From positions 744,001-808,000 of the forward strand of contig CATNEN010000007.1 in NCBI GenBank assembly GCA_950097015.1: a stretch of 64,000 nucleotides of DNA, read 5' to 3'. Source of the stretch: Macrostomum hystrix (taxonomy: Eukaryota; Animalia; Platyhelminthes). The first letter of the stretch is position 1; every line of letters starts with the position of its first letter. This document shows positions 12,901 through 24,113 of the stretch, piece by piece. The notes beneath the pieces are model-generated. The model had not been told where the DNA came from, did no database searches, and saw only the letters and a list, made by a program, of their open reading frames with translations. A program made the position numbers and the translations under genes.

Positions 12901-13241
12901 GAAATATTTTGGTGTAAAAAATGCTTGTGGAACCTGAATTGACTGCACCTGCCCCAATCGGGCCAGATGTGCAGCCGACAGCTGCACACGCCACACCCAC
13001 CCTCAATTACCCCAGCTGGGTGAACTGAATCAATTCAGAGTTAAGCAGTGTCATGCTAAAGAATAAAAACTGTTCCAATGGAGTCAGGAATCGAACCCCT
13101 GACGGTCAAGTCGCCCCAAAAAAATTGCAGGCAGCCGCATCGGCCGGCAACCAAACGCAGTGAAGCACCAGTGCGCCCAGGAGATTCAGGCCATCAAGAC
13201 GAAGCGCCGTCGATTAAATTTTAACAACTTTCAGGGCAACG

Positions 13242-16060: not shown

Positions 16061-16604
16061 GTTTATATTTGAAGAAAAAACTTTTTGTCTTTGAAAGAAA
16101 TATTTGAATTTGCTTTTCCCCACTTCTCTTGGCTTCGAATTAACAAACTTAAGTTTAGTCAATCTGTTTTATTATTGAAAAGCAATTTAATAATTTATTT
16201 TTCTCTCATAGTAACGCGGGCTTTGATTTTTTCGTCCCCATTTGCTAGCAATTTTCTGACTTTGTTATTCTACTTTGCTTTCTGTCGCTCTTCTAAACGC
16301 GTATTTTGTCGCTTATACTGGGCTTAAAATTAGTGTGCAATTGTAAATAAATTGTACTTATTTGTTTTTCTTTGCTATATAAAGGGCTTGCTCTGAACGT
16401 GACATTGTTATGCGATGCGCTTTGTTCATAAATTCAATTTGGGATTTCAGACAGGGAGTTTGAATCAGCTCTAGAGAGACCTCAACGGCAGTCATAAATC
16501 ATAATAAATCAAAAGCTGACAGGTTTGATTTTTCCGGTTAGGAGAGCGCAGAACAAACTCAGAATGAGTCTGCTCAGATTGCCGCCCACACACACACACA
16601 CTGG

Positions 16605-16872
16605 TGACGTAAGACGTAAGGTTTATTTGAGATTAAATTGAGATTATTTCGCCACCCGCGGCTGTTAATATTAATAAAGTGTACACAATTGTTTTCATGC
16701 AACACGGTTTTCATGCCTCCACATCGATAATGAGGCCTGCAGATTCCTACAGAAAGATTAACACAACTCAGAAATATTTTTGGCCCCCAAGCGAAGTCAA
16801 TTCAAACAGTTTACATAATTGATGAGGCCAGCAAATTTGAGCACACAATCTCAGAGCTCTCTCTCTATAAAT
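16605..16872 (+). promoter_or_regulatory. Putative promoter of the neuropeptide gene (CRE-like TGACGTAA at 16605, TATAAAT at 16866)
   Basis: Motifs are seen directly, and the TATA lies ~105 bp upstream of the ATG. A polyA signal AATAAA follows the stop at 17731. Confidence 0.45.
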
Positions 16873-16970
16873 TCTCTCAAATTTCAGCCGTCCAGTCGCT
16901 AGAACAAAGTTTGAGAGCCTAAAAATTGAAAAGAACTAAAAAAATCGATAGTCGTCATTTGCAGGACAGG

Positions 16971-17668
16971 ATGCGCCCATTCTCTTCGAGTTTCAAGCTT
17001 CTAGTTCCTGTGCTGCTGCTGGCAGTCTGCTTGGCTGGCGTTGAAGCGGCTCCGACGTCAGCGGTGGAGCGACACGAGACTTCTGTGGCGGTGAGACAAT
17101 ATAATGTTTCATTCATTCTTTCAATCAAAGTTAAGTCTAGACGATAGATTTTCTCAGTCATTCATCCGAGACGTCACTCTGACCTTCCCGAACTTTAGGA
17201 ACGTCACTCCGACTTTACCAGACATTTGGAACTTCCCTTCGAGAACCTGAAAGTGCATTTACATCATTCCCTCAGAGAGTTCGACGCGATGTGCCGGAGA
17301 TACTTCTGCCCGACGTTCTACACGACGGTCGACGCAAGCGTGGCTCGAATCAGTCGGGCTGCTTGAAACTCAGCCAGGCCGCGCTAATCGACCTGCTTCA
17401 CTTTCTCAACCGACGCCGGCAAATCTCAGACGCTGACAACGCCGCCGCCGTCATAGGCAAACGATTCTTTGACAGCCTGGTTCGTCCGGTGCCCATCAAC
17501 AATGGCCGGAGGAAGCGCTTCCTAGATAGCCTGGTGCCCAGCGGTTCGATCTACAGCGGGCGCAGGAAGCGCTTCCTAGACAGCCTGGTGAAGCCCAACC
17601 GGCTGTTCAGCAAGCGCGCCGGCGAGGTCGACTATTTCTGGGACGGCGAGGTCTGGTGCCCAATCTGA
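16971..17668 (+). CDS. Neuropeptide prohormone (170 aa, 2 exons) with three FxDSLV 13-mer peptides
   Basis: Exon 16971-17090 encodes a signal peptide (MRPFSSSFKLLVPVLLLAVCLAGVEA). The intron is GT..AG, phase 0. Exon 17276-17668 has RVRR, GRRKR x3, RRR and KR cleavage sites flanking repeated peptides with amide-donor Gly. Confidence 0.9.
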
Positions 17669-18729
17669 GTGCCAGCAGCTCAGCCTATGGACAATGTTAG
17701 CAGCTGCTGTAACTCTGCTTTGGCAAACTAAATAAACGCATAAATGAACACACAAAGAGCCTAGGGTTGTTATGCGTGGCAGCTGGCAATCAGAACACCA
17801 TCAAATATAATTTATTTATTGATTTTAGTTTAAAGGAGATTAATACCTTGAAAACACAGACACATACACGCACAGACCTATCATTTTTTAGATAGCAGCA
17901 GCATTGGATTGCAAAGAATGTAAAGGCAAAAACTTCAACAATTTAACTGTTCAAATATATCAAGTTTTACTATATTATAGTGTTATTTGTAAACAAGACA
18001 CAAAGCAATAATTAGACAAAATAGTTTTGACTAGTAGACCAGTTCACAAGCCTACGCGAGAGTACAACAGAGTAAGTAAACTGATGCGGAATATAATCAA
18101 ATTTGGAATAATATATATGTGAAACAAAAACTGTTAAAAATTAAATACAGAAACAACAGAGGTGCGAACCTGGAACCAGAGTCATGGCAGGGAATGAAAG
18201 AAAAAATGATTTATCCTAAGGAATAACTTGATAATTAGACTGCACAGCTGACAATATGGAAAACTGAAACGAAACTAAGGATGATGAAAAAATAGTCAGA
18301 ACTGTTTTCCTCGACCAATTAAATGACACAAGGCTGGAAAATTAAATTTCGACTAGGCAAACGAATTTTTGGTCAATGTTTTTGTTTAGAATGACTTTCA
18401 AAAAAGAGAGAAGCATCTGTTATCATATTCGCAAACCGTTGAGGAAATGCAACAATGAGAGAAACGATCGGTGTCAAAGAGCTTTGAAATTAACTTCTAA
18501 TAAAAACAGCAAAAAGTATTATGTTTTCAATCTGCTACAAATGTTCAGAAACGCAAAATAAAAGAAGAAATTTATAAATCTTCAAACAAGCCTTTCAGGA
18601 CTTTTATAACGTTTAATAGTTTAAAAATGTCATGACCTGTCATGGCTTCATATTCCGTATCAATTAGTCAATCACAAGGACTTAATAACGCTGAATATAG
18701 TGTAAATCATGGTTAGTCTGACAGAATTG

Positions 18730-19635: not shown

Positions 19636-24113
<4,478 letters not shown>

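What the first reader, a model, noticed from the sequence alone, without database searches (positions are those of the whole stretch)
16971..17668. Unrecognised neuropeptide precursor releasing a family of 13-residue F(F/L)DSLV peptides
A signal peptide and basic cleavage sites predict DVPEILLPDVLHD-amide, GSNQSGCLKLSQAALIDLLHFLN, (pyroGlu)QISDADNAAAVI-amide, FFDSLVRPVPINN-amide, FLDSLVPSGSIYS-amide, FLDSLVKPNRLFS and a C-terminal AGEVDYFWDGEVWCPI. The three paralogous peptides share an N-terminal motif rather than the usual C-terminal one, and all are exactly 13 aa. The hydrophobic-D-S-hydrophobic start loosely recalls pedal peptide/orcokinin, but amidation and the variable tails are atypical, and I cannot place it in a named family. 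Two lone Cys could link peptide 2 to the C-terminal peptide. It has its own CRE/TATA-like promoter and polyA signal. This is a candidate undescribed peptidergic signalling system.
Basis: partly seen in the sequence, partly recalled or inferred. Interest (0 to 1): 0.8.

Follow-up and report, generated by a model that had tools for sequence, protein, structure and literature searches.

The report
Flatworm amidated-peptide prohormone gene, pedal-peptide-like
This is a real, transcribed two-exon gene of a Macrostomum flatworm for a small secreted precursor that should release several short amidated signalling peptides; it belongs to a small gene family seen so far only in Macrostomum, and it resembles the pedal-peptide/orcokinin neuropeptides without being provably one of them.

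Summary
Exon 1 (16971-17090) and exon 2 (17276-17668) encode a 170-residue preprohormone. Assembled transcripts from four runs in two studies carry exactly this splice. One of them carries a 5' spliced leader, so the mRNA is trans-spliced at 16888.

M. lignano has the positional orthologue, named only "hypothetical protein". It has the same intron position and the same flanking genes. Silent sites between the two species are saturated. Even so, DVP(E/D)ILLPDVLHD-Gly and FFDSLVRPVPINN-Gly are 12/13 and 13/13 identical. dN is 0.04-0.16 in the peptide blocks and 0.6-0.8 in the spacer and signal region.

A paralogue on another contig, with copies in M. lignano and in one unidentified Logan run, has the same two peptide types.

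A profile search of 1.84 billion proteins found one credible outside hit: a Lymnaea precursor (FLDSLASDII, YLDGIASSLI) related to Platynereis "pedal peptide 2". However, the profile-profile match covers only 7 columns, and reverse searches do not recover this gene. Family membership is therefore unproven.

The TATA-like element cannot start the trans-spliced mRNA, and transcripts run past the AATAAA.

Other agents of this scan have already reported other orphan prohormone genes in this genome. Verdict: a new member of a known kind, of moderate interest.

The parts
16605..16612 (+). CRE-like TGACGTAA, 283 nt upstream of the trans-splice acceptor
   Evidence: Read from the sequence. There is no TGACGT within 1 kb upstream of the M. 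lignano orthologue, and no conserved upstream block. Its function is unsupported.
16866..16872 (+). TATA-like TATAAAT
   Evidence: Read from the sequence. It lies about 15 nt upstream of the SL acceptor, so a start site 25-30 nt downstream of it would fall after the acceptor. It cannot position the start of the trans-spliced pre-mRNA.
16886..16887 (+). AG acceptor for spliced-leader trans-splicing; the mature mRNA body starts at 16888
   Evidence: A contig of run X5 carries 23 non-genomic letters before 16887. With the next G they make a 24-mer that is found 29 times elsewhere in the genome and not in the window. In tandem-array copies it is followed by GTAAG and a Sm-like site, as in an SL RNA gene.
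16888..16970 (+). 5' UTR. The AUG at the end of the SL opens only a 5-codon uORF (stop TAG), and there is no other ATG before 16971.
   Evidence: Read from the sequence and covered by contigs.
16971..17090 (+). Exon 1 coding part, 40 codons: a 26-residue predicted signal peptide (16971-17048, ...AGVEA|AP) plus the start of the propeptide
   Evidence: Translation. The Kyte-Doolittle 11-residue window mean peaks at 3.1 over residues 8-24. M. lignano exon 1 is also 40 codons.
17091..17275 (+). Intron, 185 nt, GT..AG, phase 0
   Evidence: Skipped in contigs of all 4 runs laid. M. lignano has a 66-nt phase-0 intron at the same codon.
17276..17287 (+). RVRR convertase site ending the propeptide
   Evidence: Translation. 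M. lignano has RLRR here.
17288..17341 (+). DVPEILLPDVLHD + Gly + RRKR, predicted to give peptide 1 with a C-terminal Asp-amide
   Evidence: 12/13 residues are identical in M. lignano, and block dN is 0.04. Related ...PD(I/V)xHD-Gly units occur in the paralogue family.
17342..17464 (+). Spacer (GSNQSGCLKLSQAALIDLLHFLN-RRR-QISDADNAAAVIG-KR), with a conserved Cys codon at 17360-17362
   Evidence: 14/39 residues are identical and dN is 0.59. The RRR site and the Gly-KR are absent in M. lignano, while the Cys is kept.
17465..17518 (+). FFDSLVRPVPINN + Gly + RRKR, predicted amidated 13-mer
   Evidence: 13/13 residues are identical in M. lignano.
17519..17572 (+). FLDSLVPSGSIYS + Gly + RRKR, predicted amidated 13-mer
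   Evidence: 10/13 residues are identical in M. lignano.
17573..17617 (+). FLDSLVKPNRLFS + KR, a 13-mer with a free C-terminus (no Gly)
   Evidence: M. lignano has FYDSLVRPSSFFN, also without Gly.
17618..17668 (+). C-terminal peptide AGEVDYFWDGEVWCPI and the stop codon; second conserved Cys
   Evidence: DGE(V/A)WCPI is conserved in M. lignano.
17669..17805 (+). 3' UTR as far as contigs reach; AATAAA at 17731-17736
   Evidence: Contigs end at 17797-17805 in four runs. Contigs cannot show the true 3' end.

Best explanation
The gene encodes a prepro-peptide hormone or neuropeptide that belongs to a small, so far Macrostomum-only gene family with two paralogues.

Shown: the pre-mRNA is SL trans-spliced at 16888 and cis-spliced once. 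The 170-residue product has an N-terminal hydrophobic signal sequence. Constraint falls on the predicted peptides and their cleavage sites, not on the spacer or the signal peptide.

Inferred: after signal-peptide removal, subtilisin-like convertases cut at RVRR, RRKR and KR. A carboxypeptidase trims the basic residues, and peptidylglycine alpha-amidating enzyme converts each C-terminal Gly to an amide. This would release DVPEILLPDVLHD-NH2, FFDSLVRPVPINN-NH2, FLDSLVPSGSIYS-NH2 and FLDSLVKPNRLFS-OH. The poorly conserved Cys-containing linker and the C-terminal tail probably serve as a pro-region, and the two conserved Cys may form a disulfide in the precursor.

The peptides would act as extracellular signals on still unknown receptors, probably GPCRs. 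The 13-mers share the start hydrophobic-(L/F)-D-(S/T)-(L/V)-(A/V) with spiralian pedal peptide 2/MLD peptides. The family may therefore be a strongly diverged, amidated offshoot of the pedal peptide/orcokinin group, but that homology is not demonstrated.
For: - Gene model and expression: spliced contigs in 4 runs from 2 studies, one with an SL at its 5' end. SL RNA genes lie elsewhere in the genome. The genome holds only one copy of the gene.
- Precursor anatomy.
- Positional orthologue in M. lignano: identical intron position and conserved neighbours on both sides.
- Constraint: dN is 0.04 for the peptide 1 block and 0.16 for the FxDSLV block, against 0.59 for the spacer and 0.83 for the signal/pro region, with dS saturated.
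- Paralogue with the same two peptide types in the own genome (C32), in M. lignano (UniRef name 'Neuropeptide') and in one unidentified Logan run.
- Language-model neighbours are multi-copy neuropeptide precursors, at lead level only.
- PC2 is nervous-system expressed in M. lignano (PMC4490696).
- Copper type II monooxygenase genes are present in the genome.
- Pedal-peptide link: the family profile hits Lymnaea CAL1545335 at E 9e-5 as the only credible outside hit among 1.84 billion proteins. That protein matches Platynereis 'Pedal peptide neuropeptide 2 MLDpeptide' at E 7e-11.
Against: - No tissue or cell localisation, no peptide mass spectrometry and no receptor is available.
- The runs are only guessed to be RNA, although the splice and the SL show it.
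- RVRR and RRKR are also furin sites, so processing need not be neuroendocrine.
- The pedal-peptide link is thin. hhalign aligns only 7 columns (KRFFDSL/KRMLDEV) at 5.7% probability.
- Repeat-rich false positives scored far better than the Lymnaea hit in the same search.
- Searches of the own genome with Lymnaea, Platynereis or their profile do not return this gene.
- Two of the three 13-mers are amidated and lack the hydrophobic ...LL/...LI/...GF ends seen in the pedal-type peptides compared here.
- Two key flatworm neuropeptide papers (McVeigh 2009, Koziol 2016) were not readable here, so prior description cannot be excluded.
Confidence: 0.7

Rival explanations
1. It is a true, diverged orthologue or paralogue of the bilaterian pedal peptide/orcokinin family (PP2/MLD branch). 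The 13-mers would then act on the PP/OK receptor and modulate cilia or muscle, as pedal peptides do in molluscs.
For: - The 13-mers start FLDSLV/FFDSLV/LLDSLA/FLETLA. Compare Lymnaea FLDSLASDII and YLDGIASSLI, Aplysia FLESIAGHII and YLDGIASSLI (PMC12368835), Platynereis MLDEVGSSLL, and planarian PPP-1/2 YSYYDSIGSGLL and SYFDKIGSDLL (PMC2953531 supplements).
- The Lymnaea protein is the only credible outside hit of the profile search.
- hhalign gives E 0.0066 against 0.83 for an unrelated own-genome precursor used as a control.
- The third copy is unamidated and 13 residues long, like orcokinin NFDEIDRSGFGFN (PMC5656890). FYDSLVRPSSFFN of M. lignano shares D3, R7, F12 and N13 with it.
- No clear canonical pedal-peptide gene was found elsewhere in the genome.
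Against: - Similarity is limited to 5-7 residues, and hhalign probability is 5.7%.
- The reverse searches fail to return this gene.
- The peptides are amidated and their C-terminal half differs.
- Only three copies are present.
- It is co-encoded with an unrelated ...PDVLHD-amide peptide, which the pedal-type precursors seen here do not carry.
- From memory, the same xDSLA start also occurs in Aplysia buccalin A, so the motif alone is weak evidence.
Confidence: 0.3
2. It is a secreted, furin-processed peptide product of a non-neural gland (adhesive, reproductive, epidermal or antimicrobial) rather than a neuropeptide.
For: RVRR and RRKR fit the furin consensus. No localisation data exist. High contig word-depth in two whole runs would suit an abundant gland product, but the tool states that depth cannot be used to rank expression.
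Against: Gly amidation donors are conserved in front of the basic sites in both paralogues and all three species. Short peptides are under strong purifying selection. A paralogue has many short amidated units, which is typical of neuropeptide precursors. The peptides are neither cationic nor amphipathic in the way antimicrobial peptides usually are (read from the sequence).
Confidence: 0.12
3. Peptide 1 (DVPEILLPDVLHD-amide) is a PDF/cerebrin-type peptide, and the gene is the flatworm PDF precursor.
For: By eye...EILLPDVLHD-NH2 resembles the C-terminal half of beta-PDH NSELINSILGLPKVMNDA-NH2. That string occurs in PMC10532818 and Drosophila PDF in PMC4214601. The paralogue has ...ILGPDGIHE-NH2 and ...LLLGPDITHD-NH2.
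Against: Pfam Pigment_DH gives no match to the protein at E up to 10. A whole-genome scan with that model does not touch this locus. The peptide is 13 residues rather than 18-20. It sits at the N-terminal end of the precursor. It is multi-copy in the paralogue.
Confidence: 0.05

Closest known systems
Pedal peptide 2 / MLD peptide precursors of Spiralia (Platynereis V5TCS9; Lymnaea CAL1545335; Aplysia XP_035829589.1 peptides YLDGIASSLI and FLESIAGHII)
   Same: Secreted multi-copy precursor. Peptides of 10-13 residues follow KR directly and start with hydrophobic-(L/F)-(D/E)-x-(L/I/V)-(A/G/V). This is the only credible hit of the family profile outside Macrostomum.
   Different: The known peptides are 10-mers with free C-termini ending SSLL/SSLI/SDII, in 8 or more copies. 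Here there are 3 copies of 13-mers, two of them amidated, with a ...(P/S)-I-(Y/N)-x end. The precursor also carries a ...LLPDVLHD-amide peptide and two conserved Cys. Homology is not statistically supported.
Planarian pedal-peptide-like prohormones Smed-ppp-1 and ppp-2 (Collins et al. 2010, PMC2953531)
   Same: Flatworm multi-copy precursors whose peptides have an aromatic-aromatic-D-x-I core, and which were detected by mass spectrometry.
   Different: The planarian peptides are YYDPIGGGLL and YFDKIGSDLL 11-12-mers and are not amidated. No planarian prohormone in that paper's supplements contains HDG(R/K), PDG(R/K), DSLV or DTLV. A degenerate DNA pattern for the planarian unit finds nothing in this genome.
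Orcokinin (NFDEIDRSGFGFN) / Aplysia pedal peptide (PLDSVYGTHGMSGFA)
   Same: A 13-residue (orcokinin) or 15-residue (pedal peptide) unamidated peptide with x-(F/L)-D-x-(I/V) near the N-terminus (PMC5656890). The third copy here is also unamidated and 13 residues long.
   Different: There is no SGFGF/GF motif. Most copies here are amidated. No profile-level similarity was tested or shown.
Macrostomum paralogue B (own genome C32:182944-183258; M. lignano PAA59577, UniRef 'Neuropeptide'; Logan contig from SRR30276812)
   Same: The same two peptide types, the same Gly-RRKR punctuation and a signal peptide. E 1e-4 to 1e-10 to the window protein.
   Different: It has more copies of the ...PD(I/V)xHD / ...DVLPD-amide type and only 1-3 LLD(S/T)LV 13-mers. 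It lacks the Cys pair and the WCPI tail.

Membership tests
Neuropeptide / peptide-hormone prohormone (generic class) | N-terminal signal peptide | tested here: met
   26-residue n/h/c-type sequence ending VEA|AP, with hydrophobic core residues 8-24. No SignalP tool was available.
Neuropeptide / peptide-hormone prohormone (generic class) | Peptides flanked by di- or multibasic convertase sites, with Gly as amide donor | tested here: met
   RVRR, RRKR three times, RRR, and KR twice; Gly precedes four of them.
Neuropeptide / peptide-hormone prohormone (generic class) | Conservation concentrated in the mature peptides rather than the spacers | tested here: met
   dN is 0.04 and 0.16 in the peptide blocks, against 0.59 and 0.83 in the spacer and signal region, compared with M. 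lignano.
Neuropeptide / peptide-hormone prohormone (generic class) | Expression in neurons or endocrine cells; peptides detectable by MS | not testable with these tools
   Only whole-run contigs were available. No localisation or peptidomic data were found.
Pedal peptide / orcokinin | Several tandem copies of a 10-15-residue peptide with an N-terminal x-(F/L/Y)-D-x-(I/L/V) core | tested here: met
   Three 13-mers F(F/L)DSLV..., and the same core in the paralogues.
Pedal peptide / orcokinin | Free (unamidated) C-terminus ending in hydrophobic or aromatic residues (GF, LL, LI) | tested here: not met
   Two of three copies carry Gly-RRKR (amide) and end ...INN and ...IYS. Only the third copy is unamidated (...LFS).
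Pedal peptide / orcokinin | Detectable sequence homology of the precursor to recognised family members | tested here: inconclusive
   The forward profile hits a Lymnaea PP2-type protein at E 9e-5, which links to Platynereis PP2. hhalign gives 7 columns at 5.7% probability and E 0.0066. The reverse genome searches do not find the gene.
Pedal peptide / orcokinin | Activation of the PP/OK receptor | not testable with these tools
   The receptor was unknown in the 2017 review read here (PMC5656890). This needs an experiment.
PDF / cerebrin | Match to the Pigment_DH profile (PF06324); single 18-20-residue amidated peptide at the C-terminal end of the precursor | tested here: not met
   No Pfam hit at E up to 10. 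The genome scan with PF06324 does not hit the locus. The peptide is 13 residues and N-terminal in the precursor.
Allatostatin-A / buccalin | C-terminal (Y/F)xFGL-amide or GGL-amide | tested here: not met
   The C-termini here are ...PINN...SIYS and ...VLHD amides. The buccalin sequence itself is recalled from memory; no listed paper of the search held it.

The most novel reading that the evidence does not exclude
The A and B genes would define a new macrostomid (perhaps flatworm-wide) peptidergic system. Its precursors co-release two ligand classes. One is an Asp-amide peptide (...LLPDVLHD-NH2), a very unusual C-terminus. The other is 13-mers recognised through a conserved N-terminal F-L-D-S-L-V plus Ile11. 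They would act on receptors with no known ligand. Aplysia peptides with the same start carry a D-Leu at position 2 (PMC12368835), so these 13-mers might also be isomerised at residue 2.
Probability: 0.3. Interest if true: 0.55.

Novelty: new member of a known kind. Interest (0 to 1): 0.42.

Why it matters
Macrostomum is a laboratory model for regeneration, stem cells and sexual selection, and its neuropeptide repertoire is only patchily described. This gene gives four concrete, conserved peptide candidates with predicted masses. It also gives a paralogue for peptidomics, in situ hybridisation, RNAi and GPCR deorphanisation. If the pedal-peptide link holds, it would show how far that family can drift: amidation, a new C-terminal half, and co-encoded peptides. 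It would also be a flatworm entry point for finding the family's receptor, which the 2017 review read here still listed as unidentified. If the link does not hold, this is one more lineage-restricted flatworm prohormone family, useful but not surprising.

Tried and rejected
- Pfam scans of both exons and of all relatives found nothing meaningful.
- ESM Atlas look-alikes gave only generic neuropeptide-precursor neighbours below 0.9.
- Full-text searches for FLDSLV, FFDSLV, PDVLHD, DSLVRP, the M. lignano locus tags and related strings found no relevant paper.
- McVeigh 2009, McVeigh 2012 and Koziol 2016 are not held in the library.
- The PDF/cerebrin idea for peptide 1 was rejected at profile level.
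- The search for a canonical planarian-type pedal-peptide unit in the genome gave 0 matches.
- The best genome hits of PP2 queries are a 39-nt minisatellite that is open in all six frames. I do not count it as a gene.
- Long hits of the big profile search (P0011-P0019, P0021-P0023) are WD40/NACHT-type or other repeat proteins matched through 'TPDGRR'-like repeats. They are false positives.
- I looked for conserved upstream elements shared with M. lignano; the best local alignment is within the shuffled range.
- The joined 170-residue product was not sent to any search or fold tool. Searches used exon 1 and exon 2 by reference. The exons were joined only inside my own scripts, for the pairwise comparison with the M. 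lignano protein and for the masses.

Full report
**The observation**

The window holds, on the + strand, an ATG at 16971 that opens a 40-codon exon ending at 17090. This is followed by GTGAGA...CAG (17091-17275) and a 131-codon frame from 17276 to the TGA at 17666-17668.

I laid Logan contigs of four public runs from two studies on 16600-18100. In every run one contig skips 17090/17276 (GT..AG, 185 nt) and covers about 16887/16912/16921/17016 to 17797-17805, with 0-2 mismatches. The genome (220 Mb, 42 contigs) has only this one full-length copy and no intronless copy. The spliced contigs must therefore derive from RNA, although the runs are only guessed to be RNA.

**Trans-splicing**

The contig from run X5 begins with 23 letters that are not in the window. 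Together with the next G they form a 24-mer that occurs 29 times elsewhere in the genome. Many copies lie in tandem arrays about 11.6 kb apart on C15, C17 and C42. In an array copy the 24-mer ends a roughly 45-nt leader (...TTTATTGCATG), followed by GTAAG and an AUUUUUAG-like Sm site. That is an SL RNA gene. From memory, it matches the published M. lignano spliced leader.

The mRNA is thus trans-spliced at the AG at 16886-16887. The AUG at the end of the SL opens only a 5-codon uORF, and the first genomic ATG is 16971, with A at -3.

The TATAAAT at 16866-16872 lies about 15 nt upstream of the acceptor, so a start 25-30 nt downstream of it would fall after the acceptor. The CRE-like TGACGTAA (16605-16612) is real in the sequence but is not found upstream of the M. 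lignano gene. No upstream block is conserved beyond shuffled expectation. An AATAAA sits at 17731-17736, but all contigs continue to 17797-17805. Contigs cannot define RNA ends.

**Organism and orthologue**

Searching exon 2 (130 aa, by reference) returned M. lignano proteins. PAA82640 and its allelic copies (178 aa, "hypothetical protein") are 60-66% identical. Two WormBase-derived models (P0002, P0003) look like frameshifted versions of the same gene.

The M. lignano locus has a 40-codon exon 1 and a 66-nt phase-0 intron at the same codon. The flanking genes match on both sides. This includes an ICA69/arfaptin gene on the opposite strand, which corresponds to window 19639-23200. It is therefore the positional orthologue. 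The window itself comes from a different Macrostomum species with a much smaller genome.

**Pattern of constraint**

I compared the two orthologues codon by codon. The exons were joined only inside my script. The joined protein was sent to no search or fold tool.

| Region | Identical residues | dN |
|---|---|---|
| RVRR-DVPEILLPDVLHD-G-RRKR block | 20/22 | 0.04 |
| Block of three FxDSLV units | 41/51 | 0.16 |
| Spacer | 14/39 | 0.59 |
| Signal/pro region | 9/40 | 0.83 |

- Synonymous sites are saturated (dS above 1 or undefined).
- FFDSLVRPVPINN-G is 13/13 identical.
- In the spacer, M. lignano has no RRR site and no Gly-KR.
- The third 13-mer lacks a Gly in both species, so it is not amidated.

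**A paralogous gene**

The own genome has a second gene on C32 (E 1e-4). M. lignano has its counterpart PAA59577, which UniRef names "Neuropeptide". A complete 239-residue precursor with a signal peptide comes from a Logan contig of run SRR30276812.

These precursors carry several peptides ending ...PD(I/V)xHD-Gly or ...LDVLPD-Gly. They also carry one to three 13-mers: LLDSLAMARPIHS-Gly, FLETLARVRPIHQ-Gly, LLDSLVRARPIYN-Gly and LLDTLVRARPIFD-Gly.

Across the family the 13-mer consensus is [FL][FLY][DE][ST][LV][VAG]-x3-[PS]-I-[aromatic/N]-x-amide. There is therefore also a conserved Ile11, not merely a variable tail.

**Relatives outside Macrostomum**

- Pfam gives nothing.
- I built a profile of five family members and scored it against 1.84 billion representative proteins. 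It gave 17 hits at E up to 1e-3.
- Apart from the Macrostomum proteins, the hits are long WD40/NACHT or other repeat proteins matched by "TPDGRR"-like repeats. These are clear false positives, and some have much better E-values.
- The one exception is Lymnaea stagnalis CAL1545335 (E 9e-5). It is a signal-peptide-bearing precursor with KR-FLDSLASDII-KK and KR-YLDGIASSLI-KK repeats.
- Its closest named relative is Platynereis "Pedal peptide neuropeptide 2 MLDpeptide" (E 7e-11).
- The Aplysia counterparts YLDGIASSLI and FLESIAGHII are reported from an "uncharacterized prohormone", with a D-Leu at position 2 (PMC12368835).
- The planarian PPP-1/2 peptides YSYYDSIGSGLL and SYFDKIGSDLL, detected by MS and named pedal-peptide-like, have a comparable core (PMC2953531 supplements).

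**Why I do not file it as a pedal peptide**

- The profile-profile comparison of the Macrostomum family with the PP2 alignment aligns only KRFFDSL with KRMLDEV. That is 7 columns, 5.7% probability and E 0.0066. The control against an unrelated precursor of the same genome gave E 0.83.
- Searching the own genome with the Lymnaea protein, the Platynereis protein or their profile never returns this gene or its paralogue.
- Two of the three copies are amidated, and the C-terminal halves differ from the ...SSLL/...SDII/...GF ends.
- From memory, the same xDSLA start also occurs in Aplysia buccalin A, so the motif is not family-specific.

I therefore rate true PP/OK membership at about 0.3.

A PDF/cerebrin reading of peptide 1 rests only on resemblance by eye to ...ILGLPKVMNDA-amide. 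It fails the Pigment_DH profile.

**Mechanism**

Shown:
- transcription, SL trans-splicing and cis-splicing;
- the precursor anatomy;
- purifying selection on the peptide blocks and their cleavage and amidation signals;
- existence of a paralogue with the same logic.

Inferred from general prohormone biochemistry:
- signal-peptide removal;
- cleavage by PC2/PC1/3- or furin-type convertases (M. lignano pc2 is nervous-system expressed and essential; PMC4490696);
- basic-residue trimming;
- Gly-dependent amidation (copper type II monooxygenase genes exist in the genome, but that family also includes DBH/TBH);
- secretion and action on unknown receptors.

Function is open. If the peptides are pedal-peptide-like, modulation of ciliary gliding or muscle would be the first thing to test.

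**Novelty and limits**

No held paper mentions these peptides or the M. lignano locus tags. The two most relevant flatworm surveys (McVeigh 2009, Koziol 2016) could not be read, so prior description is not excluded.

Other agents of this scan have already reported other orphan prohormone genes in this same genome. That fits the known picture of many lineage-restricted flatworm neuropeptide families.

I score this as a new member of a known kind, with moderate interest.

Noticed in passing
G000:C10:2424326-2424929 and 2429437-2430096 (loci L015, L017): Two copies of a 39-nt tandem repeat (16 units, 95% alike). One frame reads QYLDPLSTGV(S/F)R(E/K/N), which is close to molluscan YLDPLASSLI pedal-peptide-2 units. 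These are the best genome hits of the PP2 profile (E 3e-13). However, all six frames are open, there is no signal peptide or dibasic site, and each array sits just upstream of a ribosomal protein S2-like gene copy. Whether it is a minisatellite or a degenerate pedal-peptide exon is undecided.
   Followed up: partly
G000:C3:5476667-5477173 (L020, + strand ORF from 1114): An ORF with a signal-peptide-like start and about 14 identical KR-FVQPGTYDW-KK units. It looks like another multi-copy peptide precursor.
   Followed up: no
G000:C15, C17 and C42 (for example L026 = C17:14250-14500): SL RNA genes in tandem arrays with a period of about 11.6 kb. The leader ends in ATG and is followed by GTAAG and a Sm-like site.
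   Followed up: partly
L025:1480-1530 (G000:C7:8556415): A full spliced-leader sequence that is followed by GCTTC instead of the GT donor. It may be a retro-copied trans-spliced mRNA or a decayed SL gene.
   Followed up: no
window 19639-23200, minus strand: Exons of an ICA69/arfaptin-domain gene. The same neighbour lies next to the M. lignano orthologue, and the upstream neighbour (window about 13130-13230) is also shared.
   Followed up: partly
P0002, P0003 (UniRef A0A1I8IY25, A0A1I8FMJ7): Two M. lignano protein models of the same gene appear frameshifted. They keep FFDSLVRPVPINN and FLDSLVP but lose the flanks. They look like annotation artefacts of an early assembly.
   Followed up: no
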